Shown piece by piece: positions 6,790 to 62,908 of a stretch of 62,908 nucleotides of DNA. Source of the DNA: Haliotis rubra (Eukaryota); NCBI RefSeq assembly GCF_003918875.1, contig NW_025767689.1, positions 310,001 to 372,908 on the forward strand, in the 5' to 3' direction. Each line of letters opens with the position of its first letter. The stretch's first letter is position 1. A program made the position numbers and the translations under genes. The notes under the pieces were generated by a model. It was not told where the DNA came from, searched no databases, and saw only the letters and a program-made list of their open reading frames with translations.

Positions 6790-9700
6790 CAAGAAGATCA
6801 CATATGATCCCTGACTCCCTCCATTTTGTCAGCAGTTTCAGTTTTCCATCCAGCTTCCTATATCTCAAAACAACATTCTCACTTTTAATCTGTTTTATGA
6901 CCTTGTTCACTTCAAGGAGATTGGCCACAACTGCAGATTGTATACAACTTGATAACCGACTTGTTTCAAACAAACCCAACCAGAGCCAACCAGAGTATTT
7001 GCCCTAACCAAGACCTCATTAACTTTCTTTCTTCTTCTGAGACTGGTTGTTGCTTGTCAGTTGCTTTAGCCTTGTCAATATTGCTAAAGGCAAGTTTGTC
7101 ACTGTATCCACTCTGTTGTTGCAAGACTTGATCCTCATCTGACTCAAGATGCATACCTAGATCTCTGAAAACTTTTATCTCCTCCTTCCCAACATCAAGA
7201 ATTGTTCTCATTTGATGTATGCAAGCACACCTTCAATTCCACCATTGCACCATATGAACACTGCTGGGTCAACCTTTGACACGACTGCAAGTTCCTTCAT
7301 CACTTCCCTCACACTGAAATACCACTGCAGTGAAGCATCATTCAATCCATATACACACTTGTTGATTTTCCAGACCTTTCCTCTCATGCCTAACAAACAC
7401 GTCCCTGTCTATGATTGCCCCCTGTAGGAAGGCAGTCTTGATATCCATAGCATGATGTGTCCATTGCTTGTTGACCATCACAGCAAGTATCATTATCAAG
7501 GCTTCTCCTGCACATGTTGGTGAATCTCACTACTTTTGAAGCTCCATCTTCAAAATCCCTTGCTACCAGTCTAGCTTTTCAGTTTGATTCCATCCTCACT
7601 TTCTTTAACTGTCAATACCCATCTCGTTGACACACATTTCTGTCCAGTATCTTCAACTGTTTCATATACTTGATTTCTTTTCCAACGGTCTAACTCTGCC
7701 TCTTTTGCTTCCATCCACGAAACATGACAGAATCATCAATTTCGTCTTCTGATCTCTGTTCTAGTATTTCATCATTCACCTTCAAGTCTGTGAACTGCTA
7801 AATATTATTTTGGATCAGTATACTCAACATTAAACCAAAATCTATTCTTTCGTGGCTTTCCCAGCCTTGCTGGTAATTTTAGCTGTCATGACTTCCCTTG
7901 TTTCATCATTCTTGTAGCTGATGGACTTTACCACACTAAAGTTCAGTTTGGTCTTATTTACACCCTGTTTAGTCTCTCTCTGATCTTTCATTGTCTCTAG
8001 ATCACCAAGGTCAATTTCTTTCCAACTTGACTGTTTCTTATCATCACATCTTTCTGGTACATTTTCTCGTCCTCCCCATTTTTAATGTCAAGAGTCTCAA
8101 CTTCATTGGTTTTTCCCATTCTATTCCTGTGTACTCTGATCACCATCCCACCTTGTCGGAGAAAACTCTGTCTTGACCAATAACTCTGGCTGGTCCCCTC
8201 CATTCTTCTTTACCTGGGAACTTGTAGTATACTTTCTCTCCCATACTGTATGTTCCCTCCATAGGCCTCACTTTTACTTTCAGAGCTTTGCGTATCCTAT
8301 TGTCACACTCTGCTTCAGTGAAAGCTTTCTTAGCAGAATGCAATACTCGGATATGATTCCAAACAGTTGTACTGGATGCTAGTCCTTCCAATGCTGGGGG
8401 ATTATTGGTCAAGTTTGATGGAAGGTTTGGATTCCTACCATAGACAAGTTGATATGCACTGAAGCCATGAATGTTGCTGACAATGCCCAGCTCAATGCTA
8501 TTTCCCACTTACAATTTTCTTGCTTTTTTATTTTGTTTAGTGTAAGTGTCAATGTTTGGTTGTGCCTCTCAACTGTTCCATTAAGTAAGCAGGTGTTGTA
8601 ATCACTTCCACATTGAAGTTTTGACATATATCATGCATCTGTTGATTGTTGAACTCTCGTTCATTATCTGTGAGTATCTTCATAGGTGCTCCATGAATGG
8701 CAATCCAGTGTTATAGAAATTTATCCACAGTTATTTCTGCAGTCTTATTCTTGATTACTGCTGCTGCACTGAATCTTGTAAACATGTCTATCATGTGAAT
8801 ATACCACATGTTTTGGTCAAGTTGATGAAGGACCATTGCAACCACTTCATTAAAGTCTGACGCCATGGGAAGTCCAGCAACTGGCTTTGCCGGTGTCTTT
8901 TTATGTTTGTTACATACATCACAACTGGCCACAATCTTCTCAATAATTTCAGCTTTCACTTCAGTACTGTTTCCTGAACGCTGCATTGACCATTGTAGAT
9001 TTTTTACCGAAGCATGACCAAATTGTTTATGCAACTTGTGTACAATTGTGAAAATCTCCTTTTCAGAAGCACCATCCTTCAACCACATCACCTCATCAGA
9101 CCCATGCTCTATATCCCCTGTCAAGGCAACACAGTAATGTCCACTTGATGGCATTTCTACATTGACTGCTTCTCCAAACATCATAGGTTTATCATTGTCT
9201 ATGTCAATAATGGCTTTAGTTTTCTTAAGGGCTGGCTTTCCAAAAAATAATGGAATGTTGGCATCCACAATCTGTTTCAATCTGACACTAAGTTGTCCCA
9301 ATCACTGCTGGCATTACAGCTGTGCATGACGATATATGCCTCTGTCCATCTCCAAACTTGAAGCTTTTAGTAGATTCTTTCTCTTGAGCCACAGTTTTCT
9401 TATCCTCATTCAAGGAGTTAACGTAATGTTCATACCATTTCTTACCACAAACTGATCTTGTACATGCAGTGTCAATAACTGCACAACCCTGCGCTTCAAC
9501 CATCAAGACACTATAATCTCTTGTGATCAGTGCTATGTTTTCCTCTGATTCAGTGTAGTTCACATTCTCTTTATCTTTATCTGGACAATCTTTTTACCCC
9601 AATGGAATGTAGAGAAACAGTGTGCACATCTGGTCCTCCAGGATAGAACTTTTGCTCAGACCCTGGTTTCTGTTGCTTGTTGAAAAATCTGGGACGTCTA

Positions 9701-10301
9701 TTTATCATTTCTGTCATGATTTGTCCAAAATATCCTGTCTTGTTTTATTTCTGTGGAGTCCACAGTTTCAGTTCCAAAAATTCGTCTCAAGGATGATTTC
9801 ATTGTTTGAAATCGTTTATCCACTGTGGCCGTCAAAACTAGCTGTTTTTCCTTTTGATTCAGATTGACACTATCCAAAAGTTTGAAAGTGCATCTGGTAG
9901 CTGCATGTCGTATTTGACACACTTTTTGTACTTTCTTTCATAGCTAATATTGATGAAATCACTCATAGACTCAGTTTTTCTTGTGAGACTAAAAAAATTC
10001 TGAGAAAGCTATATACGCTGCATATACACTGTCTATTAGGTCCAACTTATCCAACTCTTTTAGACATTAGTCCAATCCATCCTTCTTATTTAATTCATCG
10101 ACTGGGATTTGTAAGATAGTCTCTTTTGCCTTACCTTTCAGCACTTGAACTAGCGCCAGACCCTTCTTTTCATCCGGTAGCTCCGTGAACAGTCGCCAAA
10201 CCTCTATTTCATTTTTCCATGTATCATAGATACTATCCTGGTCCAGCGATGGCGGTTACAACAATTTCTGTGCCATATTTACCCACACACTCTGCTACCA
10301 T

Positions 10302-10471
10302 TGACACACAACACAATTCTGGTGGTTAAACTTCTTCTTTTTAATCTTCCAATCTCGAACGTGGTTTCCCACACTTCCACGGCGCACTGACCCCCGAAAC
10401 AAATATGGCTTCCTCTCGCATACTCTCACTCACTTCTTGTGATAGTTGAGACAGTCTCAAAACGATTTACA
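10302..10471 (-). repeat. 5' LTR of the GalEa-type Copia
   Basis: Direct repeat of 5895-6064, followed on the minus strand by the PBS and the gag ATG. Confidence 0.92.
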
Positions 10472-10687
10472 TTGTTCACCATAAAGACCCATCAGTCTTG
10501 ATCAAATTCAGTTCTTCTGTGTTGGGTACACAGCCATGTTCATCACTGATTTGTCAAGACTTTTGCCACTCACTACTTTTCTATTTGTACTGTGGTAAAC
10601 AACAGTTATCTCATATAATCTCGGACAAACCTGTAGAAGTTGCAGATTCTTTGAAGAGAGTCCTGCTTGGGGCACATATAAGCATTT

Positions 10688-11119
10688 GACTGCTTCTGTG
10701 GTGTAGTGGTTAGGGTGTCCGCCCGGAGAGCGGAAGGTCGCGGGTTTATCCCCGATCGCGTCATACTAAGAGACGTTAAAATATTGTACTTGTTGGTCCC
10801 TGCCTGGCGCTCGACATTAATTGGTACAACAAGGACTGGTCGGTTCCGAGTCAGTATAATGTGTCTGAGTGAGGTATTCAAGCTTCACTGCAGCATGGTA
10901 TCTCAGTGGGCTAGCACTATAAAACCAGCTTAAGTCTGGGCTAGTACAAGCAGCCGCACATACGCACGCATGCGCATGTGCGGCTGCTTGTACTAGCCCA
11001 GACTTAAGCTGGTTTTATAGTGCTAGCCCACTGAGATACCATGCTGCAGTGAAGCTTGAAGGAAGTCTTATGAGCGAAATATCCTCAAGCACGACGCAAA
11101 ACCCAATTTCGCATCACAT
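10688..11119 (+). mobile_element. tRNA-derived SINE (second family) with an internal perfect inverted duplication
   Basis: The head is tgtggtgtagtggttagggtgtccgcc...ggtcgcgggtttatcccc and the tail is (catca)n. A 15-bp TSD cacatataagcattt lies at 10673-10687 and 11120-11134. The 85-bp perfect inverted arms are at 10877-10961 and 10976-11060. Confidence 0.88.
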
Positions 11120-11179
11120 CACATATAAGCATTTAAATGTCCATTTTAAATTCCTATGACAGTTGTAACTATATTTTGA

Positions 11180-13270
11180 ATAAAAGTTTTACAAAACAAA
11201 AAATACACTTTTTGGTCTTGTTCGACCACCCCTGCAGGTACCAGTAAATGGAGGTCTCCAAGAGAAATTCAACGAGTGCAGATATGTCAAACGTAATACC
11301 AATGCGGGAAACCAAACCACCACCAAGAACACAAGTCCAGGGGGAGGAAAGTATTAATACACATCACCAGTATACTGAAGCATTTAAAAGTATTCTCAAA
11401 AGCTCAATCAGCTAGAGAGTTAACGACTCTGCCCAGTGTTGAGAACTGACTCGCATGCTCGCAGGAGTGTCTGTCAAGTTGGTAATGACGGATGAACGTG
11501 CACAGCTGGCTCCAAATAGTCACAGAGCAGATCTCCTTAATGGACAGGGCCACAGCATATGCCTTGGAGGTGGCTAGCCCAATGATCTTTCAAACCCTTT
11601 TTCAAGCCTTCAGATTCTTAGGACGGTAAGAATCTGGCAGCTGAATGCTGACTCTGTCCTTATGAAAAACAGTTAGCTCATTGCCTGAATGTTACCTACC
11701 CATCTACCAGACATTACCACAAAAAGAAATGCCAACTTCCACATCAACAACTGGAGGATAAGAGGCAACAGATTGTGAAACAGAGGACCTGACAGCCAAT
11801 CAGGAATGACTGAGAAGTCCCATGTGGGACTAATCCGGCGGACAGCCAGACGGATCCTATCCACGCCTGCTAGAAAGCGCTGTACAAGAGGGTGCTGCCC
11901 CAAAAGGACAACATCGAGATTTATATGAAACACTAAGATAGCCATGGAGTAACCTTGAACAGTAGAAGCGGTGAGATCAGCTTCTTATCTGACTGAAGGA
12001 CCTCCAAAACTACGACTAAATCCCCAGAAAAGGGATGAAGAATCCCCCTGTCGAGACACCAGCACGCATATCCCATCTATTCTCATACTGAAGTTTGTTG
12101 AATACCTCAATGAAGCCGAAATTTTGACATGTCTCCATCCTAAAAGACAACACCTTTATCATGTTATTCAGTCCTTCAGATTTAAAATGGGTCTGAACCC
12201 TCTGCCCTTTTTGGTCACTAGGAGTAAGTGGAATGAAATCCCTTGTTTTCCTGACCGTTTGGAACCACCTTGATGGCTCCCTTGTCCAGCAATGACTGCG
12301 CCTCGGCACTGAAAATGTCTGCCTTTTCTTGAGAGGCTGGCACTGGTGTGCGGCACACTCCGAAAATGGACGTTGGACTCGCCTCCATGTGGCCATCCCT
12401 GAGTGAGGAAAGGATACACAATTTTGAGGTGGCTTTCTCCCATTCCCAAAGGAATATGGACAGACAGCCGCCGACAGGGACATCTGGCAAGAAGCAGTGA
12501 ACACACACTGCTCCTGCTTGAGCTGGAGTCACCAAGGGTCCTTGGTGCCTTTCTTAGTCTGTAATGGAGCAGTCCATTTAGCCGACGCCAAAGGATAAGA
12601 AGCAGCAAGAACCAAGGGCTGCTGGCGAGATGTGGTGGGTCTTAGAGTCCTAAAGGTGCTAACTGCCTCTAATTCTACCTTCTAAGCCCCAGGGAGGAGG
12701 GTAGAACCCAAATTCTAGGGCAAGACAGCCACAACTAATGCAGGCCCTCAACGGCGCACATCAACTGGATGGGACAGCTAGGAATGCTGTCCAGAGCCAA
12801 GTGTGAATGCACATCTGTCAGCTGCCACGCGAGCGTAGGTGATGATTCGTCATCACCGCTCTGACGTTGGTCCACCAGCTCTCCCTGCAAGGCAGAGAGA
12901 TACGCTAAGAGGACCACCACCTTTAGCTGCTGTACCGCTTTATGGTACTGCTCCTCAATTCCTTTATTCAAAATATTGTCGTAAGAAATTTAAAAAGGGC
13001 ATTTAAATGCTAAAAGGTACCCCAAGAAGGACCTCTTCTGAAAAAGAATACCTCACCTGTTGTTTAGTCATAGTCTTGAGTGCTTCATCGAATATGGGCC
13101 TGGTCATTGTACTATTCTGGTACTCATCTTCCAACATGGATTTTGCTTGGTCAAGATGATCCATGCTATCCGAGAAGAAGTAGAGGGTCATATAATTCAC
13201 TGGCTGTTCTTTTGGCAGTGCAAAATGTTTAGTCTTCTCAGGAGATCCTCCCCAAACATACTCTGTAAAT
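11180..13270 (-). mobile_element. DIRS1-like tyrosine-recombinase retrotransposon remnant
   Basis: RT fragments are QSLLDKGAIKVV and LVTKKGRGFRPILNLK. YR fragments are HPLVQRFLAGVDRIR..PTWDFSVI..WKLAFLFVVMSGRWVGNIQAMS. The element is heavily deleted and frameshifted, and its boundaries are approximate. Confidence 0.78.
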
Positions 13271-13349
13271 CAAAAGTGAAATACCAACATTGCCAGCTTC
13301 AACAATTTAATCATACATTCATGATAAGACAATCATGCATTTATGATCA

Positions 13350-13515
13350 GAGTGAGTACATGAGTTGGGCTCTACACCGCTTTTAGCAATATTCTGGCAA
13401 TATCACGGCAGGGGATACAAGACATGGGCTTCACACATTTACCCATGTGGGGAATTTAACCTGTGTCTTTGACATGAAGAACTAAAGCTTGAGCCACTTG
13501 GCTACCCAATCACCT
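13350..13515 (-). mobile_element. Old, diverged copy of the 3555-3727 SINE family
   Basis: Aligns to the young copies through cgcttttagcaatattc...tgggcttcacacatt..cccatgtgggga...ggctaccc. Confidence 0.8.
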
Positions 13516-13523
13516 CGATTAGA

Positions 13524-13692
13524 CTGACTGACTGACTGAGTTTAGTTTTACGCCGCTTTTAGCAATATTCCAGCAATATCACGGCGGGGAACACCAGAAA
13601 TGGGCTTAACACATTGTGCCCATGTGGGGAATCGAACCCGGGTCTTCGGCGTGACGAGCCAACGCTTGAACCACTAGGCTACCCCACCGCCC
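13524..13692 (-). mobile_element. Young tRNA-derived SINE, same family as 3555-3727
   Basis: Near-identical to 3555-3727, with a (TCAG)n tail. A 13-bp TSD cacctcgattaga lies at 13511-13523 and 13693-13705. Confidence 0.9.
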
Positions 13693-15013
13693 CACCTCGA
13701 TTAGAAGAACATAACCTCACACAACAGCCATACCATGATCACCCTAGGAACTTGCAAGGTTTCATTAAGTAATCTCTAGCCCAATTAAAAGACTCTATTC
13801 TTAAAGAGTCTAAGTCAGTCCTGTATGTTTCAATGGAAATGAGAAAATGGAAATCCTGAATAGTAAAAGGTTTGTACATGTTTGTTTTAGAATCCAATAC
13901 TCAACAATATTCCTGACATATGATAATGACTGAGTGTATAATCCTGTCACTGATATTATTAACAATGTCCAACATACAACATCAAACCATGTTGACATGC
14001 AATCAACAAAGTGACAGGTCCTAACAAACCAATCAGTTTAGTCTTACAACCAGGGTGCCATTGTACAAAGTGATGTTAGAGCTAAGACTGCTCTGTACAC
14101 AGCATACCAATATCACCGATGACTGTACACCTGGAATATGCAGATGAGCCACAACAAAAGAGAGGGTTCACAAGCAAGTTCACACAGTCAGAAGCGAGTG
14201 TGTCCAACTTCTGTACTGATCCACATCTGGCACCTTTCACCTCATTGGGCTACTAAACATTGATGAAAACCTTGGGGGAGATCATTACATATACAAGAAA
14301 GGATTTAGCAGAGTCCCTGCCTCATTGTTGGAGGGTTCCGATGACGCCATAAATGTTGTTCCACTCTATGCCAGACATCCTGCTGTCAGCTCTGTGAAGA
14401 CAGTAACGTGCCTCATCAGTAAAGAGGACTCCACTCCACTCATGTGCTCCCCACTGGAAGTCCTGACCACTAGACTGGAAATTGGCCATTGAGCTGGGCA
14501 TCCTCCAACGATGCCATAGATATCAACAAATTGTTCCTGCAAACACATCTCTGTAGCCAGGTATAATTGCTAGGTGGAACCTGTGTCTGAGTTGTGTGGT
14601 TTGAATCCATCAGTCTTGACATGGGGCTGTAACTGGTGGGCGGTCATTATTGGGACTGTCTATATGGCTTGATTGGTTTGCTGAAAATGTTGCTATGAGT
14701 GCCAAATGGTGGATGTTGAATCGATGAAATAGGTTGTGTTGCTATGTACCAGACTAAAGTATACGCATAGTTCTCATCTGTGATTTACGCCCCGGAGGCA
14801 TGCAATGTTGAACTTGTTCCAGAATAATGGATGTTTTTCTTACTTTTGCACTTGCTAAATGGAAATGATAAGTGTCTGGTTTTGCCTGGCCTGTTAAATT
14901 GGAAATTTTAACTATAAATTGTATATTTATCTCAAAATATCTCAAGATTGTTAACTATTATGTCAGAAAGGAAAAAATTCACATTTCAGAGTTGTGGCCC
15001 TTTTTTTTGCTAA

Positions 15014-15347
15014 GGCCAGACCAATTTTATTTCTTGTTTAACGGATCTGTCGGTCGTATTTTTTCAAGAATAAAAAAACCCAAAAAAACAAATTTCCCCG
15101 CTCAAAAAATAAAATCCTAATGTTTTTATCGGTCAAAAATGTAAACTTACAAGAATTTTTTTTTATTTTATTGTTTTTTGCCCCATATATACTTCACAAA
15201 TTACCAAAAGTAAAATACTTTTAATATTTAGAAGGAATATTACTTTGACTGGTGATCTTATTTTATTTTTCTTCCCCTCAATGCTTCTGCCTTTAGGTTA
15301 TCTGAGGACAAAATCAGCCCAAAACAAGAAATACAATTGGTCTGGCC
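15014..15347. mobile_element. PIF/Harbinger-type MITE
   Basis: The ~26-bp TIRs are ggccagaccaattttatttcttgttt and aaacaagaaatacaattggtctggcc. A TAA TSD is present on both sides. Confidence 0.85.
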
Positions 15348-16058
15348 TAAAACAGAATGTTTATATGTTTTACCATTAGATGACACAAAGACCTATAGGT
15401 ATAATGATAAGGCTTAGATATGTCCAAAAGCCCTTGAAGTGTGTTGTTCAATGTCTTTTTCACCACAAACCACCAAATATAACTTAATAAAATCATATTT
15501 TCACATTTTGACCGAAACTGAAAATTTGCAATTTTTTGGCAGTTTTAGAAGTCAATGAAAACTCAATAAATGGCCCAACAATTGCAATAATTTGATTTTT
15601 TACACCCCAAAATAAAGCAAGTGTAATTTCATAATTTTTTCTAAGATGCCTAGCGGTTAGAACAATCGAAAAAAAAAACCAAAACATTATCAGACAATAA
15701 AGGTATAGTTTTTTGATGACGTAACAATTGAATGACGTTATCCCGCTGCCCCCTCGTAGTCACGTGTGTCCATGGTAACATTTGATCCATCTGGTCCCGG
15801 TTGTATCAAACTTTAATAAAGCTTTAATCGTTAATTAAACTATGATTAGTTAATCACTGATTATCTTCAGTTGCATGAAGTCCTTTATAAAGGAATCCCT
15901 TCATTAATCCATCATTAAGCTAATGATGGTTTGGGGGTATCATTAACTCATCATTAGCTGTATCAACATGGCAGACGACATAATGTACCATCAACTTCGA
16001 CGTCGGAGAAAAGAAAAACATTTTCGTGAACGGATTAATTAAACCCCACCGGGTGCCA

Positions 16059-17099
16059 CAGGGACATATATGTCCTTCCTCTTTAACCCTCACTTTGAAG
16101 TTCAATAAAATTCTAAATATATCACATATATATATATACAAATATACTTCACAGTTTTGAATTCTGCGGGAAATTCACTGTTTCTTGATACCATCCACTA
16201 TTAAATCAGACAAAACTAAAGTGCTTAAAATAACCTTTCAAAATGGACTTCGTCATGTTGCCATTTTTGACACAATATGTAATCGCGATTCACAGAGTTA
16301 TTTGCTGTAAGTTTTGAAATGTGAAAATTTGACAATTACTGGGAATATAGAATTTCAAAAATAGCATAGTAATGATCACTGATATCAGTTTTTCATAAAA
16401 TCACTAATGATAATTCTGAAACGTTGCCGATGAACCAAGAATCGGTTGGGATGTTTTCGAAAATACACTTACACAAACGCCGAAGTGCGTTTTCCGCCAT
16501 ATTGGATACCGTTTACAAAATCACGTTTCGCGAAGGCCGGTATTGAAACACCAATTACATCACGTATATTTCATATTCAGCTGCGAGAAATACACCAGTG
16601 AATTCCCTATACATTTTGGAATCAAATGGTCTTTGTCACCAATTCCAACTGTCTAGATGAAATGAATGGAAAGATATTGGGGTGAAAACGAACATTGTAC
16701 TCGAAAGATTGCACTTGTTTGAAATGTAAACAAAGAAAACATCCGATTTTACACTGCGTAGCATTTTCTGGAATTGTCCGACATCCAGCCGTCCATTTTA
16801 GGCTTGCAATGGCTCAATATCTTTAGAATATGCATGGAAAGAGTATCGTGCCAAGAAACAGGAAATTAAAAACAGATACAATGCAATGATTTGATAATTC
16901 ATAAGAATTTATCAAGGTTTCCATGCAGCGTGACGCCATGACTGATGCAAAATAACACAGAACGACAACGGTAATTATCAGCATTTCTGGCTTCTTCTCT
17001 TATTTATCCAATGAAAACTATAAAAACATATAACAATACACAGAGAGTCAGAATAATTCTGATAACTTACATCACATATTTATGTACAAATGATCCCTG
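16059..17099. mobile_element. Possible TIR element nested in the Harbinger
   Basis: The imperfect TIRs are cagggacatatatgtcc and gtacaaatgatccctg. No matching TSD is visible. Confidence 0.35.
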
Positions 17100-17460
17100 A
17101 ATCAAGGGAAGAGTCCTCGCCAAATCCTGTGTACCCTTGTCAGCGAAGTCGCCATTTTGTAAGAAATCGGTCAGCAATAGTGATGTCATACGTCAACCTT
17201 GTTGCACATATTAGGCAATTTCTTTGAGGTGAAGGTCGGCTGAACAAGAGTAAACACAATCGCCCTATCCTTCCGATTACACTGTCAGTATTATGATGTG
17301 TATTTTGCGTATAGTTCAGATACTTTTTCATGAAACTAACTTCAGTATCTACATTTAGTTTTGTTTAATATCATATCATACGTGGATATAGGGTATACAT
17401 TCTATATTTTTTTAACGTTTTTGATTGTTTGAATAATATTTACATAAGAAATTGACACAT

Positions 17461-47200: not shown

Positions 47201-47229
47201 CGTCTCCCGGCTTCTAAAATGCTGCCCAA

Positions 47230-50219: not shown

Positions 50220-53200
50220 AACACCAATGACGGCGTTGCCACAAGATCATCATCAACCGGAGCAAAAGATAAACAAAGCGAAATTGCTAACAACCCAGGC
50301 AAGTGATAAAGTGTTACAATCGTTGATTGGCGAAGTCCGTTTGATATCTCGCAAAAAGTGAGACAGTTCAACGCTCCAATGATAACGTTGTGGATAAATT
50401 AACTGTCATTGAAGATACCTTGAAAAACGTGTCTGATCAAGTTAATGGGGAAACAAATCAACGTTGTTTTGCGTTGTAGGAAGAAAACACGGAACTTAAA
50501 GGGATAATCAAATCGATGGATGAAAGAATAGATTATCTTGAGAACCAGAGCAGAAGATCCAACCTAATATTTCATGGTGTTCAAAAATCCAAACCCGGTG
50601 AATCGTGGACAGATTGTGAAAATATTGTGAATACAATCTTAATTGATGATCTTAAACTTACTGACATTAACATACAGAGAGCACACCGTATCATGAAAGG
50701 AAAGGCTATTATAGTCAAAGTCGGCGACGACAAGGATAAACACTCTATACTGAAAGCATCTAAAGTGTTGAAAGAGTCAAACAGCGATGTGTTTATTACT
50801 GAAGATTTCCCACAACTTGTCCGTCAAAACGTAAGAAACTGATTCCGTTTATGATCAAGGCCAGGGAAAATGATCGTATGGCACAATTGCGCTTCGATAA
50901 ATTATGTATTGAGGGACAATGTTTACACTTACGATGTGACGTCAGATGTTGTCATCACGGTAAAACGGGGGAGAAAGGCAGGCATTGAGAGTGAAACGCA
51001 TGCACTTGAAATCGACAACACGCACGCCTAGCAGGGCCCGGCCCAACAGACACCAGCTGACGACAGCTCTGGTTCGTGGTTGAGATTTACATCTTGGAAT
51101 GTGCATGGACTCGTGCATAAACTGCAAGATGGTGATTTTTCTCGGTTATTGTTTAAACTTTGATGTAATTGGATTTGTGGAAATTTGGAATAATGTCACT
51201 CTTAAAAATATCACATCAACATTTAGAAATCATGTTGTAAATATCAATCAAAGGACATTCAACAACAGAATTGGTGTAGCTATATGTGTTAAACAAACCG
51301 CAAGTGAACATATAAAGAAGGTTTGGAATAGTTTCATTGATTGCATCTTTGTTTTATTTGATAAATCTTTATATGGAACATCGCATCACGTTCTGTGCGG
51401 ATAATGTTTATATCAACCCAGTTAACTCCTCAATCAAAAAGTGATCCAAGACCGCTAAAAGGAATTGGCTATTTAGAGCAATGTTTGTTGTCATGTATAT
51501 CAGATGTAGACGTTTCAGATATTCGTTTCATTTTGATGGGGATTTTAATTCAAGGACGGGAGACCTTAGAGATTTCATCATTCACGATGACAACCAACAT
51601 ATACCTAGTTTGGAAGATATGGAATATAATGCTGACAACTTTCACCATCCAGGAATAATGTCGACAATATTACAAATTCGTATGGACGAGATCTGATAGA
51701 TTTGTGTTGCGCTCACAACATACACATGATGAATGGGCGAAGTAGATCTGACCCTCGAGGGTGACATGACTTGTTTTCTCACAATGGCTCCAGTATGGTG
51801 GACTATTGCATATGTTCAACTGATATATTTGACATGGACCATGACTTCATTGTAGAAACTCGTTGTGAATCTGACCACCTACCCATCGTACTTACCTTGT
51901 GTATACCACATACTCCCCACAGATGTGATGGGGACAGTGGCAGTGTGCAACGTTTGTTAGATATAGGTGGAAAGAAGAACAGAAACCATTCTTTGTTGAA
52001 CTTAAATACTGGACTCGAGAACTTTACAAATGACGCCATTGAGGATGTGAATGACGCGGCACATAAGTTAACAGCATGTATAACATCGTGCGCAGATAGA
52101 TGTAACATGCGATTTTTGGAAACCTTTCACCATATAAGCCCTACAACGCCAGCTGGCATGACGAAGAATGTAGAAACCTGGAAGCAGCTGAAATATACTA
52201 ACTTAGATTGTTTTAGATCAGCTGGGGAGCTACATTTCTGGTCAGAATTTCGAAGTCTACGAAACTCATATCGACAGCTATGTCGCATCAAAAGGGAAAA
52301 TTATGAGGAAAATAAGGTTAACCTGTTATCGTCTAATTCTAAGAACTCAAAGTCGTTTTGGAGCCAAGTTAAACGCCTAACAACGGATAAAATCAACTGA
52401 TATCAACTCTATATCGGCAACACAGTGGGTCGATTACTTCGAAGAAGTAATGAATATAAGTGATGAGAATACGGATCAAGACCATGTCAGAGAAGCCAGT
52501 ACATTTCTTGAAAATCACGATGAACATAATTGCTATGCATGCAATAGTGATACCATTAATAATACTCTGAACTGTGAAATCAAGCATAATGAAATTGTTG
52601 ATGCCATTGACAATCTGAAGGACGGTAAAGCTCCTGGTCCTGATGCAGTAACTCCAGAAATGATAAAATGTTGTAAAACTGAATTATTGCCATTATTTCA
52701 TGCATTGTTTAATAATATTTTGAACAGTGGTAATTTCCCTATAGAATCGGCTAAAAGGACTGGTTATACCGCTTCACAAGAAGGCAAGAAGACAGAGGTT
52801 AATAATTATAGAGGGATAACGCTTAGTGATGTCATGGGGAAATTATTTACGTTTATATTAAACAAGAGGGTTGACAAGTTTTTGTCATCAAGTATGACAA
52901 GATTCCTGAGTCTCAGGCTGGGTTCCGTGCTGGATATAGCACTGTTGATAATATTTTCAGTTTACAGTGTCTATTCCAAAGTATATCTTGAAAACTAATG
53001 GTCGTTTTTATTGTTTATTCGTTGATTTCAGAAAGGCATTTGATTCCATTAATCGTAAATTATTGTGGTTCTCAGTTTTTTAAATAAAGGTATTCATGGT
53101 AGAATATTTACAGTATTATTGGACCTGTACTCCCAAAGTTAAATCTGCTGTTAAACTGTGAAATAGTTCCATTTCTCATTATTTTGATACTTTAAGTGGC

Positions 53201-54152
53201 GTAAAACAAGGGTCTATTTTAAGTCCTTTGTTGTTCTCTCTTTTGTTGTTGAGTTGGAAACTATGTTACAGGAATCGAATGTCCGAGGTACATTTGTTGG
53301 TCAAGAGTTTCGTGATATTTTATCTTTATTTTATGCTGATGATCTGTGTGTTTGTTTGATGATAGTGTGATTGGTCTAAAAAGAGAAAAATAGATATATT
53401 GGAGCAGTTTAGTATGAAATGGGGTTTGGATGTCAATTTAGATAAGACTGAAATTCTAGTTTTTAGAAATGGTGGCAAGTTACGGTTTTCTGAAAAATTG
53501 ATGTTTGGCAATAAAACTATTAAGACATCGACCTATTATAATTATCTTGGGTTAACGTTTTCTAACAGGTTATGTTGGTCAAAAGGTATTGAAGTTCTTG
53601 TTCAAAAAGCATCAAAAGCCCTAGTATCCGTTAAACAATTAGAGCGTAAGTTTCAGAATATTTCTTCTTTAGTCTTATTCAAGATATTTGATGCTCAGAT
53701 TAAGCCAATCTTACTCTATTCTAATGAAGTGTGGGGCCATTCAAAGTTTGAAGGCATCGAGCGTTTTCATGTTCAAGGTGGGAATTGCCTTTAATGATAA
53801 ATGTTAGTGGAGCGTTGTGGTTATTGGTCGCAATGAACGATTTTATGGTATGTATGAATGGATGTATAGAAGATGAATACCATTTTCTGTTAATATGTAA
53901 AAGTTTATTTCATTTAAGACAAAAGTATATTCCTGAAAATGTCTGGAAATATCCCTCTATTTATAAGTTTAACATGTTATTAAGTTGTGACAAAGTAGAT
54001 ATCTAATTAACCTTAAAATTTGTAAAAGAAGCTTTAAGGTTAAGAAGTGCTTAAAATGTATCTAACCATTTTGTCCTTGCATTATTATTTGTGAGAGTTT
54101 TGTGCTTGAGCTATGGCTATACAGAATAAAAAGAATTTGAATTTGAATTTGA
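50220..54152 (+). mobile_element. Mirror copy of the LINE
   Basis: Reverse complement of 18054-22475. It shows GKAPGPD and SDHLPI, with the (GAATTT)n tail at ~54132-54152. Confidence 0.88.
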
Positions 54153-54237
54153 ACAACTCGACATAGTTCTCCGTTGGAAAAACATCGTCCTTAAGAGAGA
54201 TAGGTGATATGGATGCGCCATGTTGATTTACAGAACA

Positions 54238-56437
54238 GGACCCAGGATTGTGTCAGCTTGTGATTAATGTAATCATCAGTTAAACACTAAATCATTGATT
54301 AAAATTCTTAATGTTTGTTTTCAGTTAAATGGAAGTAATTTTAAATACGGATGTATAAACCCACTTCTATTTAAACACCCATTAACTTTAAAAGTATACT
54401 ATCTAATAGAAAAGGTCCCATTATTAAACCATGATTAACTTGGGGAATCCTAATTATCCATGATGCAGGTGCAACACTCATCTATAGTCTGCATAATGAC
54501 TGCCGTCAAATCGCAGTAAAACTTTGAAAGTTGAAATACAGGTCCTAGTTGAAGATCATGTCCGGTGTGTTAAACAGCAAACTGACTAACTCCATTACTA
54601 ATGACAAAAGAACCACATATAGGGACCAAAATAACGTCTGAGCTCCAATAGCATTGGGGTAAGCAATAGAGCATCCAAAGAAATCAATACAAAATGGAAC
54701 AACATGTTTCCAAAATGCAAATATAAAAGTGTTTTCAGACAGAATATGGTCTACTACACATAAATGTGTCAATTTCTTATATGTAAATATTATTCAAACA
54801 ATCAAAAACGTTAAAAATATAGTGAGATGTTATACCCTATATCCACGTATGATATGATATTAAACAAAACTAAATGTAGATACTGAAGTTGGTTTCATGA
54901 AAAAATATCTGAACTATACGCAAAATACACATCATAATACTGACGAATTGAAATCGGAAGGATGAGGGCGATTGTGTTTACACTCTTGTTCAGCCGACTA
55001 TGCCTCAAAGAAGTGCCTAATATGTGCAACAAAGGTTGATGACATCACTATTGCTGACCGATTTCTTACAAAATGGCGACTTCGCTGACAAGGGTACACA
55101 GGATGGCCGAGGACTCTTCCTGATTCAGGGATCATTTGTACATAAATATGTGATGTAAAGTTATCAGAATTATTCTGACTCTCAATGTGTATTGTTATAT
55201 GTTTTATAGTTTTCATTGGATAAATAAGAAGAAGCCAGAAATGCTGATAATTACCGTTGTCGTTCTGTGTTTATTTTGCATCGATCGTGGCGTCGCTGCA
55301 TAGGAAATGATAAATTCTTATGATTATCAAATCAATGCAGTGTATCAGTTTTAGTTTCCTGTTTCTTGGCACGTGCTCGTACCATGCATATTTCCTAAAG
55401 ATAGTGAGCCATTTACCAGAAGCCCTAAAATGGACGGCTGGATGTCGGACAGAATTTCCAGAAAATGCTACGCAGTGTAAAATCGGATGTTTTCTTTGTT
55501 TACATTTCCAAAACCAAGTGCAATCTTTCGAGTACAATGTTCGTTTTCACCCCAATATCTTTCCATTCATTTCATCTAGACCAGTTGGAATTGGTGACAA
55601 AGACCATTTGATTCCAAAATGTAGGGAATTCACTGGTGTATTTCTCGCAATGAATATGAAATATACGTGATGTGGTGGTGTTTCAATACCGGCCTTCGCG
55701 AAACGTGATTTTGTAAAGCAGTGCATCCAATATGGCGGAAAAGAAACGCACTTCGGCGTTTGTGTAAAGTGTATTTTCGAAAACATCCCAACCGATTCTT
55801 GGTTCATCGGCAACGTTTCAAGAATTATCATTAGTGATTTTATGAAAGAGCGATCAGTGATCATTACTATGCTATTTTGAAATTCTATGTTCCCAGTAAT
55901 TGTCAAGTACTACATTTCAAAACTTACAACAAATAACTCTGTGAATCGCGATTACATATTGTGTCAAAAAGCAACATGACGAAGTCCATTTGAAAAGTTA
56001 TTTTAAGCACTTTAGTTTTGTCTGATTTGTAAGTGGATGGTATCGAAACAGTGAATTTCCGCAGAATTCAAAACTGAGAGTATATTTGTATATATATATG
56101 TGATATATTTAGGAATTTTATTGAACTTCAAAGTGAGGGTTAAGAGGAAGGACATATATGTCCCTGTGGCACCAATTGGGATAATCCGTTCACGAAAATG
56201 TTTTTCTTTTCTCCGACGTCGAGATTGATGGTACATTATGTCGTCTGCCATGTTGATACAGCTAATGATGAGTTAATGAAACACAAACCATCATTGAAGC
56301 AGTAATTATATGGATTAATGAGAAGGATTCCTTTATTAAAGGACTTCATGCAACTGAAGATAATCAATGATTGATTAACTAATCATAGTTTAATTAACGA
56401 TTAAAGCTTTATTAAGGAGTTTGATACAAGCCGGGAC
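54238..56437. mobile_element. Mirror copy of the Harbinger element
   Basis: Reverse complement of 15794-17968, including both TIRs and MADDIMYHQ (ORF 56012-56251). Confidence 0.8.
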
Positions 56438-59400
56438 CAGATGGATCAAATGTTACCATGGACACACGTGATCTACGAGGGCAGCGGGATAACGTCATTC
56501 AATTGTTACGTCATCAAAAACTATACCTTTATTGTCTGATAATGTTTTTGGTTTTCGATTGTTCCTATTTCGCTAGGCATCTTAGAAAAATTGTGAAATT
56601 ACACTAACATTTTGGGGTGTAAATCAATTATTGCAATTGTTGAGCCATTTATTGATTTTCATTGACTTCAAACTGCAATGCAAATTTCAGTTCGTCAAAA
56701 TGAAAATATAATTTATTAAGTTATATTTAATTGATTTTATTGAAAAAGACGATGAACAGAGCTTTTAACATAACTAAGCATATCATATACCTATAGTCTT
56801 TATTATCTGCTATAAACATTCTGTTTTAAACCAGACCAATTGTATTTCTTGTTTTAAAGAGTTTTGAAATCACTCAGGTAACGAAGAAAAACAAATAGAT
56901 CACCGATCAAAGTAATATTCATAAATAATGAAAGTATTTTATTGAGCTAATGAGGGCAAGCAAAATAAAAAGAATAACTAACAATTTGACCAGAGACTGA
57001 CACTGGCCGGCGTATTCTTGAAATACGACCGTGAATCAATTAAACTGAAAACAGTCTGTTCTTTAAAAAGAACCTAACTGAAATAACGGTACAACTTTCT
57101 GATATAATGGTGTAATCTTGAATATTTTGAATAAATAACCACAATTATGGACTTCCAGTGGGCAGGCTTTCAGACACTGGCATTCCATTGTAGTGCGAAA
57201 ACATCCGTGATGCGGAACAAGGGTCAGCATTGCATGCCCCTCCGGAGCGTAAATAAGATGAAACTATCGTGCTGCTGGTCTGGTGCATAACGGCGCAACC
57301 TATTTCATCGATTCAACGTCCGCCGTTTTGGCACTCTGCTGGCTGTTGCAAATATCGAGATTATCGAACGGTCCCCAATAACTGAACCGCCCGCCATTTA
57401 ACCCATCTCAATGAACGACAATTCAACCGCACGACTCGGTTCTGGTATGCCTGACTGCAGCTGCGAAGATTGTTGACCGACTGTCTATGGCGTCGTTGGG
57501 CTCGCCAGCTCAATATTGACCGGTCTGAAAGTGGTCGGGGCGCGGAACGATGAGAACACGTTACTACCGGGGAAGCGACGGCTGGAACAACGACTATGTC
57601 TCGAACCCTCAGCACAATGGTGCGAGTTCTATGACTGTATGTCGATGATCTTCCCCGGGACGCTTCGTCAGTGTTCGAAATATTGTGGTTAAGGTGCCGG
57701 ATGTGGTTGGTTGGCGCACTCGCTTTCTGACTTTATTATTGGTGCCGAACCTGCTCTTTGTTGGCTCATCTGCATATTCCAGTGCAGTCATCGACGATCC
57801 TGACGTAACATTGGCCACTGAAGCAGTCTTAGCTCTAACATCGCTTTGAAGCGCAATGGCACCCGCAATTGTGAACTAAACTGTTGATTTCGTTGAGACT
57901 GATAACGTTGATCGGCCTTGGTTGGCGGACGACGTTAATAACCAGCCGGTGACGGTACTGCACTCGGTCGACCATCATATGTCATATTGACCCGGTGAAC
58001 TAAAGTGAAACGTAATACGCTATTCGAGATTTCCATTTTCATTATTTATGCAGGGGTGACTTGAGCTTTCTTTTAGGTAGGTCTTTTGAACGGGCTGAAA
58101 ATTGTAATGGCTGCAATGGGGTAAACCATTGCTTGACTGTTGCTGTTCTTCTGATGGCAACCTAGTGTTCAGCGTTGACTAAAACAAAGACCCGGTGATT
58201 CACAGGCTTTATTATTGTTCTGGTCGGCTGCTGGAGATATTATGGCGGCGACAAACTCGGTCGATCGATCGATCTAATCTCGAGGTAGTCAGCTTTAACT
58301 CATCGAACTTGCGGTTAAATGTGGCATTATGTCTTATCCCCTGCCGTGATATTATGAAGATATTGTAAAAGCGTGTTGAAGCCCAACAAACAACTCTGAT
58401 CATCAAATGCGTGTCTTATCGTAGTGTATGTTCTGTTGAGAAGCAACATCGACCATTTCGCGACACAGCTGAGGAGATCTCTGAAGAACTAGGCATTTTG
58501 CGCCTTAACGACGATGAATGCGCGATACTAACTATAAGTTGTTTAGCAAATCATGTTGAAGATGATGCCAGAAATGATATACGTGACCGAACCTTCGATG
58601 AACACTCAGATGACTAACGGCTGGTGGTGCCGAAGTGCGAACTGCTGGCTGTCTTGTACCAAATTTCTTCGCGACAATGAGATAATGAGCCTGTGGGTGG
58701 TGGTCTGGTATCTCTCTGCCTTGCGAGAAACCGGACTTCCGTCGGAAAGCGATGATGACAGTCATCACCTAAGCCGTGTTCAGCGCGATGAATATTGCAT
58801 TCGCATGACTCTGAACGGCATTCTATCCGGTGATAACCGTTGAGCCTGCGTGTTGTGTCTTGCCCGGTAGGTTCTACCCTCCTGAGAACAGAATTGAAGG
58901 CGATTCTAATTACCGCATCTCGCCGGCATTACTGATTCTTTAACGCTCTATCGGCGTCGACTATCGAGACAACCATTACGAACAGAAAGCACCCGGAACA
59001 TGGTGACTTGTCCAACGAGGAGCAGTATTATTGGTCTGCTTCGCCGAATATTCCTGTCGAACGATGTAATCCCGCTATTCGCTTTGAGATGAGGCGCCAC
59101 CTCCAAGTATTATTATCTCGCTCGAGGATGACCGTAGTCCAACGTCATTTTCGGGTGTGCTACGTACCTCGCAAAGACGAACATTTCGATAACGAAGACA
59201 CTCCGGTCGTCAACGAGAACTCAGGCGATTCAAACGATAAAGCTGAGTTTTATATTGACGAAGGAACCGGTGAACTTTGGTATGATAAGGTATTCTTTAG
59301 GATGAACGCTCGTCCATTCGGCTTCGTGGTATTCAACAGGCACTCGGTAACAATCGAATGGACTATGCGTGCTGTTATTCTCGTTGAGATTTCTTCAAAT

Positions 59401-62400
59401 GCTGCTGGGGATTTGAATAAACAGTTTTGAGTCCTTTCGATCGGTCAAGCTGATCTCACCGCTTCTACTGTTCGGAGTTTTCATATTTATCTTGTTTCAT
59501 ATAGTCGTGTTGTCGCTGGCGGCTTTGGCACGGGCGTGGACGGAAGTCGATGCTGACTTGTCGCGGTTACGTGGAACTATCGGTCGTCTGATTGACTTTG
59601 TCGGTCTCTGTTTCACAGTCTGTTGCTCTTATCTGATTGACCGATATTGAAGTTGGCATTTCTTTGTGTGTCTGACGAATGAACGGCATTCGAATAACTG
59701 TTTTCATAGGTCGGCTTTAGATCTAAATCTGGTACAGTATCATTGAGCTAACTAAGACATAGTGACTGTCGTGAGATGCCGCAACATTTATTGATAACTG
59801 CTGATTCTCCGTCGTACCAACGACGGTGCGCTCTAGCATAACGTCTGTTTTGTTAATGATGACTTTGATACTTTAAAGCTCTTCATTATACTGATGATGT
59901 CTATTAACTTTCCTCCTGAACGTTGGATACCGCGTGTATTACGTTTGACATATACGCATTTCTCTTGAAGACCTCCGTTACTGTGCCGCGAGATGATGGT
60001 ATTGTTGTTTTGTAAACTTTACATTCAAAATATATGGTCACAACTTTGTCATGGTAAATGAACATTTAAATATCTTGTATGTGTTAATGATGCAGTGAGT
60101 TTTGCGTCATTAACTGACTTCTCATAAAATTCCTTCAAGCTTCGCTGCGGCATGGTGTCTCGGTGGGCTGGCGCTATGAGCCATTCAGGGGTCTGGTGGT
60201 ACGGCGGCGTGCGGCGTAGGTATTGTTGGAAACGGCACGGCGCTGGCGGACTTAAGCTGTTTTATAGTGCTGGCTTACTGGTATAACTGCGATAACTTGA
60301 ATACCTCGGGCATTATCGACCGGAACCGACGGTCTTTGTTGTTGCCGAATGTCGGCATGGCGGAGACCAACGTAATATTTTAACGTCTTAGATCGCTTCC
60401 GCGACGCTAAACTCTCGACTGATTCCATAACCACCACAGAAGCGCGATCAATAACGCTGTTCTTTAAACGGCTTCTCTTCAGAATCTGCGGCTTCTACGA
60501 GTTTGTCAGCGCATCGGACAACGTTGTTTACCACGTACAATTGATGACGAAATAACGACTTAGTCGGTGATGATCGGCGCAATGAACATGGAACGGCTGT
60601 AAATCGTTTTGAACTGTCTCGGCTTATCGCAGAAGTGAGGCGTGGTATGCGAGGCTGTATTTGTTTCGAAGTCGGTCGCCGAAACCGGGTGAATTAGAAG
60701 AAGTTTAACCACCAGTGTGTTGTGTCGTGGTGGCGGGAAGGTATTGATGGTGAAATATGAAAATTGACGTGACATGCATCGCTGGACTTATGTATCTTTA
60801 TGACCCGTGGAAAAATGAGAATAAGGTACGGCGACTGTTGTACCGTGAAAAGAAGGTCTGGCTTCAATTCAATTCTACGAACAGGTTTATCTTACAAATC
60901 CCCGATCGATAATTAAGAGGATGGACAGTTAATAATCTGAAAGTTGAATGAGCCGGACACAATAGTTCGGTGTATACGGCGTGCTGTCGAAGGTACAGAA
61001 AACTGAGTCATGATCGGAATTTCATCGAAATATTAACTATGAAAAGATGCAAAAGAGATGTCAAATACGACGTACATACCGAATGCGCTTTCAATTTTTG
61101 GATAATTCAATCCTCAAGAGGAAACGGCTGTTTGTTCAAACAATGTCATCGCTTGAACAATTTTGCGGAACTGAACGCTCCACAAATAAACAGGCAAAAC
61201 TGGACAAATACGACAACTGTCCGGGAATGCAAACAAAGGATCTGGAGGACACTGTTTCTCTACGTTCCATTGTTGTCGAATAAAAGATAATGTTTACTGA
61301 ATCGAAGGAAAACTGTAACGCCGATCTGAAATTATATTGATGTTGGCTTTGAGATTGTGCGGTCATGATGCTGCATCTGCAGATCGGTTTGTCGATATGT
61401 TGTAATTTCCATTGCGTTAACTTTCGGTTGATTAAAGAAAACTTTGTGACTTTCGAAAACCGAGTTTGAGATGGACGAAGGTATATATATCGAATAAATG
61501 CACGGCTGTATTATAAACGTGTTTAGTTTAATGAACAACGGGTGGCATTCAATTCCATTTTTGAACAAAACTAAAAAGCCGATGATGACATGAACGATAA
61601 ACCTATGATGTTGGAGAAACGATCAATAATGAAATGCATCGAGTGGTTCTGTCGTTAGCGCTGACGAGAGGATATGAAGCATGGATCTGATGATGATGAT
61701 TTGAAGATGAACGAAAAGGGACACTACGGTGTACGCAAGTTGCATAAACAATGGTCGTACTCATTATCCGCAATGATCGTGCGGCGTTCAGAAAACATTA
61801 CTGAAGATGGCTAATTATTGAAGATTATTGACCCGGTAACGATGTAACAATGAACGCGACGAAAACCGGTACTGAACTTCCAGCATGACATTTAATGAAG
61901 TGGTTGCAATGATCGCTTCATCGGCGAACCAAACATATTGATATATTCCTTGTTGGGCTGTGTTTACAGATTCGGTAAACGTGATATCGGAATGAACTGC
62001 CTTAACTGTGGATAGGCTACTGCTGGCACTGGTTATTCATCGAACTTATGAAGATTTTCACAATGAACGAGGAGTTCGGCAATCATTTGAATGCGTAATG
62101 TCCGAAAGGCAAATATTGAGTATTACAACGCCTAACACTGAACAGTTGAGACAAACGGCGACTTCGAACGCAAATTGGTGGAGCTGAACGTCAATGACTC
62201 GCTTTTGATACCTTCGTCGGCATTAACGGGCGACAATTGCATTATTTTGTAAGCTCGTAAAGTGAACAGCGGTAAAATGGTAACCGGTGAACAGTGGCGA
62301 ATAACAATGACTGGGGTGAAATATTGATGAATAGTAGTTCTTAGAAGATGTAATGAAGATCGAGAGAACTGAAACAGCCAGTGTTAAAGTCCGTACAGAA

Positions 62401-62908
62401 TGATGAAACAAGGAAATGGAGCATTAGGTACCGGCAGACTGGAAAGCCGCGAAGAATGAATTTTGGTTTAATGTTGATTATGCTGATCAAAGTAATATTT
62501 GGCAGTTCACGAACTGAAGATGATGAAGGCTCTTGCCGAGATCGAAGACGAATTGACTGATTCTGTCATGTTTAGGTGGATAATGCGAGACGGAAAATCG
62601 AAACGAAAACAGTTGAAGATACTGAACAATATTCAACGATGATAAGGATGAATTGGCAATGAACTGTTAACGGATTTTGAATTGGGCTTCAAAACAGTGA
62701 ATTCAGCTGCGGGGCTTGCGCGATAATGATACTGCTGTCGGCGCAATGAACATCATGCTATGGATAATGGCTCTACGGTAATCATGGTTGAGGTTGTTCG
62801 ACCGGAAGATCGGAAAATCAACAATGTGTGCTATGGAGCGAATGATGCTTCACTACGATATTCAATGTGAAAGGAAACCGATGAAGAACGGTCGTGATCC
62901 ATACTGTC

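What the first reader, a model, noticed from the sequence alone, without database searches (positions are those of the whole stretch)
7270..62908. A >25-kb fold-back centred at ~37,545 makes up 40% of the window and is probably not real DNA
Seen: every element from ~37.4 kb back to ~7.3 kb reappears in reverse complement and in order after 37.7 kb. The right arm is ~25 kb against ~30 kb on the left, so its differences are deletion-biased. Established: nanopore reads in which the complementary strand follows the template give this kind of fold-back with a lower-quality second arm. Inference: an unsplit template+complement read entered the assembly. A real palindrome of this size would be remarkable, so the test matters either way.
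Basis: partly seen in the sequence, partly recalled or inferred. Interest (0 to 1): 0.7.

Follow-up and report, generated by a model that had tools for sequence, protein, structure and literature searches.

The report
Fold-back read artefact at contig end
The last 25 kb of this abalone contig is an error-filled, back-to-front copy of the 30 kb before it, almost certainly added by one faulty nanopore read, so it should be trimmed and not read as biology.

Summary
Window 37,725-62,886 is a collinear reverse-complement copy of 7,295-37,365 (25.2 kb against 30.1 kb), and it runs to the last bases of contig C2799.

The right arm is not a diverged paralogue. Against outgroup copies, nearly all differences arose on the right arm: substitutions 363 vs 6, 209 vs 3 and 183 vs 4 in low-copy segments. 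Runs of six or more identical bases fall from 1.10 to 0.12 per kb. Small indels are almost as frequent as substitutions, and deletions dominate in the worst stretches. A high-copy LINE segment looks drawn towards its family's other copies, which fits patchy polishing.

That project used 1D and 2D libraries, Albacore 2.3.3, Porechop, and wtdbg plus DBG2OLC.

The best reading is that a single fold-back read of a ~30-kb fragment formed the contig tail (confidence 0.87). The switch lies at 37,668-37,724, not at 37,545.

So "one molecule" is inferred, not counted.

The scan has noted other fold-backs in this genome, on other DNA. I re-tested none.

The parts
7295..37365 (+). Left arm: the genuine, polished copy of the locus (transposon-rich, non-coding)
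   Evidence: Homopolymers of 6 or more occur at 1.10 per kb, the same as upstream. It carries almost none of the derived differences. It is collinear with the paralogue on C2818.
37366..37667 (+). Genuine sequence with no counterpart on the right arm: the far 302 nt of a 449-nt dispersed repeat (37,219-37,667)
   Evidence: Three other loci match 37,219-37,667 end to end. 37,497-37,667 is 92% identical to L005 with one gap, so it is not raw-like.
37668..37724 (.). 57 nt of unknown origin that hold the switch from forward to reverse-complement sequence
   Evidence: It is not a recognisable reverse complement of 37,497-37,667: alignment score 22 against a shuffle mean of 24. No ONT ligation-adapter match rises above the window's background.
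37725..62886 (-). Right arm: degraded reverse-complement copy of 7,295-37,365, probably the second half of one fold-back nanopore read
   Evidence: It is collinear with the left arm. Derived substitutions, right vs left: 363/6, 262/31, 209/3, 183/4. It holds only 3 homopolymers of 6 or more in 25 kb. It has 726 indel events against 1,172 substitutions.
50221..53773 (-). LINE segment of the right arm, drawn towards the family's other copies (probably polished by reads or contigs from other copies)
   Evidence: Left-right identity is 94.0%, yet each is 96.3% identical to another copy, L012. Derived changes are symmetric here, 56 vs 55 substitutions.
18441..18908 (+). Left-arm piece missing from the right arm (discrete loss of about 465 nt on the right)
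   Evidence: It is present in the left arm and in the outgroup copy L012, and absent between right 53,777 and 53,780.
22474..22866 (+). Left-arm piece missing from the right arm (discrete loss of about 390 nt)
   Evidence: The flanking blocks end at right 50,221 and 50,218. The outgroup L024 matches the left arm from 22,608 but the right arm only from 50,218.
62887..62908 (.). Last 22 nt of contig C2799; the window end is the contig end
   Evidence: The contig length is 372,908 and the window is C2799:310,001-372,908.

Best explanation
The right arm (37,725-62,886) is not part of the abalone germline genome. One double-stranded fragment of about 30.4 kb, spanning window 7.3-37.7 kb, gave a single nanopore read of about 55 kb that ran along one strand and then back along the complementary strand. 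The first half of that read overlapped normal reads and merged into the polished consensus, which is the left arm. The second half had no partner reads, so the overlap-based assembler left it hanging as a 25-kb contig tail.

The second arm of such a read passes the pore too fast, so bases are miscalled and skipped. That explains why the arm is about 16% shorter and only 62-89% identical. Later polishing could not repair it, because true reads map better to the clean left arm. Only the high-copy LINE segment was drawn towards its family's other copies, by cross-mapping reads or short-read contigs.

Shown here: the structure, the position at the contig end, the one-sided and indel-rich errors, and the homopolymer loss. 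Inferred: that a single molecule is responsible, which assembler step kept it, and which of three routes made the read. I put unsplit template plus complement, or a fold-back molecule made in a 1D library, at about three quarters together. A 2D hairpin read called as 1D is less likely, because those libraries had a read N50 of at most 9.5 kb.
For: Structure: the arms are collinear inverted copies, 30.1 vs 25.2 kb. The right arm ends 22 nt before the end of contig C2799.

Polarisation with outgroup copies, substitutions derived on right vs left: 28,050-29,664, 363 vs 6 (plus 303 deleted columns on the right); 22,608-25,793, 209 vs 3; 22,867-25,792, 183 vs 4; 14,471-15,793, 262 vs 31; 25,793-27,098, 66 vs 13.

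Error profile: all 12 substitution classes occur and Ts/Tv is 1.24, so this is not editing-type hypermutation. There are 726 indel events against 1,172 substitutions. Deletions outnumber insertions by 3-7 to 1 in the worst blocks.

Homopolymers of 6 or more: 42 in 1-37,500 and 3 in 37,501-62,908, that is 1.10 vs 0.12 per kb between the arms.

Source: the right arm carries the two insertions that the paralogue C2818 lacks, so it was copied from the left arm itself.

Assembly identity: 1,378,282,171 bp in 2,855 contigs here against 1,378,265,264 bp in 2,854 scaffolds published for H. rubra. The difference is 16,907 bp and one contig.

Pipeline: R9.4 MinION reads, 14 LSK108 and 5 LSK208 libraries, Albacore 2.3.3, Porechop, wtdbg and DBG2OLC, Racon, Pilon and QuickMerge. 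Read N50 in the long libraries was 17-32 kb.

Literature: fold-back artefacts make up 0.55-0.6% of ONT genomic reads, are missed by Porechop and can tangle assembly graphs (PMC12870357). The arm read after an inversion junction is low quality and consistently shorter (PMC7229812). The 2D caller is absent from later Albacore versions, so 2D reads are called straight through the hairpin (PMC5600009).
Against: No reads could be laid, so the number of molecules across 37,668-37,724 is unknown.

The centre is asymmetric: 302 nt of genuine sequence plus 57 nt have no counterpart on the right. A simple template-then-complement read should be symmetric about the fragment end.

No ligation adapter is recognisable at the centre.

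Identity of 62-70% over long stretches is worse than ordinary raw R9.4 reads.

A noisy second arm does not by itself exclude a real, very young palindrome. Reads of a true second arm would also map to the clean left arm and leave a noisy backbone unpolished.
Confidence: 0.87

Rival explanations
1. A real, very young germline inverted duplication (arms of at least 30 kb, spacer of about 360 nt). Its second arm is represented only by a noisy read because good reads of both arms collapsed onto the left arm during assembly and polishing.
For: An asymmetric spacer of a few hundred nt is typical of true fold-back inversions (my own knowledge). The centre has such a spacer and no adapter. Nanopore reads across true inverted duplications also give a poor, shorter second arm. 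Very few changes are derived on the left arm (3-6 per 1.6-3.2 kb), which would fit a very recent copy.
Against: The arm ends with the contig, so no sequence leaves its outer end. With about 30x reads from both strands, reads entering from the far side would give the right arm normal quality and carry the contig onward. The prior is also unfavourable: about 0.6% of roughly 9.5 million reads are expected to be fold-backs, whereas 30-kb perfect palindromes are rare.
Confidence: 0.07
2. A joining error in the meta-assembly: QuickMerge or scaffolding attached a redundant copy of the same locus, from the other assembly or a haplotig, in the wrong orientation.
For: The published pipeline merged two assemblies and then purged haplotigs. 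Other redundant or error-ridden stretches have been noted in this assembly.
Against: Each input assembly was polished (two rounds of Racon and one of Pilon) before merging. A redundant contig would therefore be of consensus quality, not 62-89% identical with homopolymer loss. The raw state implies that the tail competed with the left arm for reads within one assembly. This step is inference.
Confidence: 0.04
3. An old palindromic segmental duplication whose arms diverged by mutation, with patches of gene conversion explaining the 94% block.
For: Identity along the arms is patchy, and the LINE block shows symmetric differences.
Against: Outside that block the differences are one-sided by 8- to 70-fold. 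Indels are nearly as common as substitutions, and long homopolymers are selectively lost on one arm. The symmetric block is a high-copy element in which the right arm is as close to other copies as to its own partner.
Confidence: 0.01

Closest known systems
Fold-back (palindromic) artefact reads in Oxford Nanopore genomic libraries (Heinz, Meyerson and Li 2026, PMC12870357)
   Same: Two halves map to one locus on opposite strands. There is no recognisable adapter between them. Porechop misses such reads, and they can corrupt assembly graphs.
   Different: Here the artefact is seen only through an assembled contig, not as a read. The gap between the two halves is about 300-360 nt, whereas that paper's criterion is within 200 bp. 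Read symmetry cannot be measured.
Sequencing failure after inverted-duplicate junctions (Spealman, Burrell and Gresham 2020, PMC7229812)
   Same: The second arm has many wrong and missed bases and is consistently shorter than the first. Here the ratio is 0.84 overall and about 0.75-0.78 in the worst stretches.
   Different: That paper describes true inverted duplications confirmed by short reads. Here no independent support for the junction exists.
2D (hairpin) nanopore reads base-called as one 1D read (White et al. 2017, PMC5600009)
   Same: Five LSK208 2D libraries were used, and the basecaller version (Albacore 2.3.3) no longer contained the 2D caller. Such reads come out as template, hairpin and complement in one piece.
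   Different: Those libraries had a read N50 of at most 9.5 kb, while this case needs a read of about 55 kb. I had no referenced hairpin-adapter sequence to search for.
Real palindromic segmental duplications or fold-back inversions
   Same: Inverted arms of tens of kb with a short spacer.
   Different: Real ones have both arms at consensus quality, symmetric divergence, and unique sequence beyond both outer ends. None of these holds here.

Membership tests
Long-read fold-back artefact carried into an assembly | Two collinear segments of one locus on opposite strands, joined head to head | tested here: met
   7,295-37,365 against 62,886-37,725.
Long-read fold-back artefact carried into an assembly | The two halves meet at nearly the same reference position (within about 200 bp in PMC12870357) | tested here: inconclusive
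   The forward part ends at 37,667-37,724 and the first detectable reverse match is to 37,365, an offset of 302-359 nt. The poor start of the second arm, and other losses of 390-470 nt in it, could hide the rest.
Long-read fold-back artefact carried into an assembly | Second arm of single-read nanopore quality: indel-rich, homopolymers compressed, shorter than the first arm | tested here: met
   compared with PMC7229812.
Long-read fold-back artefact carried into an assembly | Errors confined to the second arm (polarised with outgroups) | tested here: met
   substitutions 363/6, 209/3, 183/4, 262/31.
Long-read fold-back artefact carried into an assembly | Junction supported by one molecule only, while other reads pass the site without a break | not testable with these tools
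Long-read fold-back artefact carried into an assembly | The tail ends where the molecule ends (contig end) | tested here: met
   the contig is 372,908 nt long, which is the window end. The right arm stops 22 nt before it.
Unsplit 1D template plus complement read | End adapter followed by start adapter at the centre | tested here: not met
   the best adapter-pair score near the centre (44, at 37,792, inside the genomic right arm) equals a background hit at 2,337. The adapters are as printed in bioRxiv 10.1101/2022.07.07.499093. Absence is common in such reads.
2D hairpin read called as 1D | Hairpin adapter at the centre | not tested
Real inverted segmental duplication | Both arms accumulate differences at similar rates | tested here: not met
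   The only symmetric block is a high-copy LINE.
Real inverted segmental duplication | Unique sequence continues beyond the outer end of each arm | tested here: not met
   The right arm runs into the contig end. No other contig overlaps 36,000-37,445 at near-identity.

The most novel reading that the evidence does not exclude
The abalone germline, or a sizeable share of this animal's cells, really carries a palindrome with arms of at least 30 kb and a spacer of about 360 nt at this transposon-rich locus. It would be so young that its arms are still identical, and it would be visible only through one noisy read because the assembler collapsed the rest.
Probability: 0.06. Interest if true: 0.5.

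Novelty: not a real feature. Interest (0 to 1): 0.1.

Why it matters
It matters for quality control, not for biology. About 25 kb at the end of this contig (C2799:347,668-372,908) should be trimmed or masked. Otherwise it adds false transposon copies and a false giant palindrome, and it may produce false gene fragments.

The published read set, about 9.5 million reads from 1D and 2D libraries, is expected to hold tens of thousands of fold-back reads. Other contig ends in this assembly may therefore carry the same kind of tail.

Other fold-backs and inverted duplications reported by this scan in the same genome should be put through two cheap sequence-only tests used here. One is to polarise the arm differences with an outgroup copy. 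The other is to count long homopolymers per arm.

Tried and rejected
**Read pile-up.** Later adapter and alignment scripts masked or skipped them. One local script used the whole window file as BLAST subject, and a local homopolymer census read it whole.

**Run search.** It found three small runs of one study, sharing 0.20, 0.05 and 0.05 of the words. At about 1 Gb each they are too shallow to say anything about either arm.

**Adapter at the centre.** No match rose above background.

**The 57-nt junction piece.** I tested it as a collapsed reverse complement of the unmatched 37,497-37,667. It scored no better than shuffles.

**Editing-type hypermutation of one arm.** Rejected, because all 12 substitution classes are present and indels abound.

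**The right arm as a copy of the paralogue on C2818.** Rejected, because the right arm carries both insertions that C2818 lacks.

**Patchy polishing explained by copy number alone.** Only partly supported. The low-copy segment 22.9-25.8 kb is 88% identical yet shows no pull towards other copies, and low-identity stretches also contain repeats.

Outgroup majority states were only counted.
Full report
**1. What is in the sequence**

The repeat finder found 114 inverted pairs, all on one anti-diagonal. Self-BLAST of the window against its own reverse complement gave about 30 collinear blocks. These pair left 7,295-37,365 with right 62,886-37,725. The arms measure 30.1 and 25.2 kb.

The sum of paired coordinates falls steadily from 75,080 at the centre to 70,181 at the outer end. 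The right arm's shortfall is therefore spread along its whole length. Two discrete losses add to it: 18,441-18,908 and 22,474-22,866 have no counterpart on the right.

Identity is very uneven:
- 94% at 18.9-22.5 kb
- 88-89% at 15.2-18.4 and 22.9-27.7 kb
- 62-80% elsewhere

**2. Where it sits**

The genome search places the window at G000:C2799:310,001-372,908, in a genome of 1,378,282,171 bp and 2,855 contigs. A request for sequence beyond the window showed that the contig is 372,908 nt long. The right arm therefore stops 22 nt before a contig end, and nothing is assembled beyond it.

**3. Which assembly this is**

Earlier notes of the scan call the genome an abalone. The Haliotis rubra paper (PMC6774278) reports a final assembly of 1,378,265,264 bp in 2,854 scaffolds. 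The difference from G000 is one contig of 16,907 bp, which is mitogenome-sized. I take G000 to be that assembly.

The paper and its supplement describe the pipeline:
- 14 LSK108 (1D) and 5 LSK208 (2D hairpin) MinION libraries, with R9.4 flow cells named for the three DU_PF1 runs
- Albacore 2.3.3 for base-calling and Porechop 0.2.4 for adapter trimming
- a wtdbg assembly and a DBG2OLC hybrid assembly, each polished with two rounds of Racon and one of Pilon
- QuickMerge to combine them, then Purge Haplotigs

The supplement lists about 9.5 million reads (my sum of its read counts). The salting-out 1D libraries had an N50 of 17-32 kb. The 2D libraries had an N50 of at most 9.5 kb.

**4. Is the right arm a diverged paralogue or a noisy copy?**

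*Polarisation.* I polarised the differences between the arms with outgroup copies from the same genome. A same-strand collinear paralogue on contig C2818 (89-98% identical) lacks two insertions that the left arm has, at 15,794-22,607 and 25,794-28,049. The right arm has the counterparts of both. So the right arm derives from the left arm itself, and C2818 is a true outgroup.

Substitutions derived on the right vs the left:

| Left-arm segment | Right | Left |
|---|---|---|
| 28,050-29,664 | 363 | 6 |
| 22,608-25,793 | 209 | 3 |
| 22,867-25,792 (two outgroups) | 183 | 4 |
| 14,471-15,793 | 262 | 31 |
| 25,793-27,098 (nine outgroups) | 66 | 13 |

In 28,050-29,664 the right arm also has 303 deleted and 23 inserted columns. 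Two copies that evolved side by side cannot differ in rate by 8- to 70-fold.

*Error profile.* All 12 substitution classes are present and Ts/Tv is 1.24, so this is not editing-like hypermutation of one arm. Indel events number 726 against 1,172 substitutions. In the worst blocks, deletions on the right outnumber insertions by 3-7 to 1.

*Homopolymers.* Runs of six or more identical bases occur 42 times in 1-37,500 and 3 times in 37,501-62,908. Per kb that is 1.10 on the left arm, 1.10 upstream and 0.12 on the right arm. From my own knowledge, this is the compression typical of R9.4 base-calling.

*Reading frames.* The long frames of the Gypsy-type pol fragment on the left are 24,030-25,109 (RNase H and integrase domains) and 25,148-25,822. 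No frame of 150 aa or more lies in the matching right-arm stretch.

**5. The one block that behaves differently**

In the LINE copy at 18,909-22,473, derived changes are symmetric, 56 vs 55 substitutions. Left-right identity is 94.0%, while each arm is 96.3% identical to another copy, L012. The right arm is as close to seven other copies as the left arm is.

A plain noisy copy of the left arm would be further from everything else. So this part of the right arm has been drawn towards the family's common sequence. The likely cause is cross-mapping reads, or collapsed short-read contigs, used during consensus and polishing. The LINE family gave 214 first-look candidates in the genome. This explanation is inference.

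The 465-nt piece at 18,441-18,908 is present in both the left arm and L012. Its absence is therefore a loss on the right arm.

**6. The centre**

Three other loci match 37,219-37,667 end to end, so this is a complete 449-nt dispersed repeat. Its far part, 37,497-37,667, is 92% identical to L005 with a single gap, which is consensus quality. From 37,725 onward the match to the same repeat, now reversed, drops to 75% with four gaps in 77 nt.

The change of direction and of quality therefore lies in the 57 nt at 37,668-37,724, not at 37,545. About 300 nt of genuine sequence (37,366-37,667) has no counterpart on the right arm.

The 57 nt are not a recognisable reverse complement of the neighbouring sequence. 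ONT ligation adapters, as printed in bioRxiv 10.1101/2022.07.07.499093, score no better at the centre than elsewhere in the window.

This asymmetry is the main loose end. It could be another skip of the kind seen at 18.4 and 22.5 kb. It could be a loop in a fold-back molecule made during library preparation. In the rival reading, it would be the spacer of a true fold-back inversion.

**7. How it most likely arose**

PMC12870357 reports several relevant points:
- Fold-back artefact reads make up about 0.55-0.6% of ONT genomic reads.
- Porechop and similar tools miss them.
- Fewer than half keep more than 11 bp of non-mapping sequence between the two halves.
- They can tangle assembly graphs.

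Applied to 9.5 million reads, that rate predicts tens of thousands of such reads in this project.

PMC7229812 shows what happens after a nanopore has read one arm of an inverted duplicate. The second arm passes faster and gives wrong and missed bases. It comes out consistently shorter, over a length that tracks the first arm. That is the pattern here, with a ratio of 0.84.

PMC5600009 states that the 2D caller was dropped from Albacore after version 1.2.4. Hairpin reads not recognised as 2D are then called straight through as 1D.

The outer end of the right arm corresponds to left coordinate 7,295. This implies a fragment of about 30.4 kb and a read of about 55 kb. That size fits the long 1D libraries better than the 2D ones.

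Each input assembly was polished before merging. A raw-quality tail therefore implies that it competed with the clean left arm for reads inside one assembly. This speaks against a merging error (inference). An overlap assembler that keeps the overhang of its last read, such as DBG2OLC, is the likely source (inference).

**8. What could not be done**

No molecules were counted across the junction and no k-mer support was measured.
- The three runs found are about 1 Gb each, which is too shallow to inform.

**9. Verdict**

A real, very young palindrome stays at about 0.06-0.07, because a noisy second arm alone cannot exclude it. An old diverged palindrome is refuted.

This is a known kind of assembly artefact. 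It is of low scientific interest but has practical value for anyone using this assembly.

Noticed in passing
window 7,295-33,400 and G000:C2818:31,511-44,333 (part held as L024): Contig C2818 carries a same-strand, collinear paralogue of the left arm at 89-98% identity. It lacks 15,794-22,607 and 25,794-28,049. So the locus belongs to a segmental duplication or giant composite element of at least 26 kb, into which a LINE and a 1.3-kb repeat pair inserted later.
   Followed up: partly
window 25,827-26,863 and 27,101-28,048: An inner inverted pair (76% identical) of a very abundant repeat of about 1.3 kb. Many other loci show plus and minus copies side by side.
   Followed up: no
window 37,219-37,667: A complete 449-nt dispersed repeat with copies on C1449, C2376 and C1046 at 82-89% identity. 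It lies exactly where the contig leaves genuine sequence, so repeats may have broken the true assembly path here.
   Followed up: partly
window 36,780-37,209; 33,472-34,327; 4,802-5,152: Three short satellite arrays: 155 nt x 2.8 copies, 192 nt x 4.5 and 167 nt x 2.1. The 155-nt array is compressed on the right arm: three left-arm stretches of it all match one right-arm stretch, 37,930-38,048.
   Followed up: no
window 3,659-3,717 (-): An Rfam tRNA match of 33.6 bits, just above the gathering score of 29, that ARAGORN does not call. It may be a tRNA-derived SINE head.
   Followed up: no
window 51,771-52,400 and 52,450-52,998 (+): The right-arm LINE segment holds two open frames (209 and 182 aa, no Pfam hit) where the left-arm copy has none of 150 aa or more. 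This fits that segment having been drawn towards less decayed family members.
   Followed up: partly
Patchy identity arises here from an artefact, so that case deserves the polarisation and homopolymer tests.
   Followed up: no
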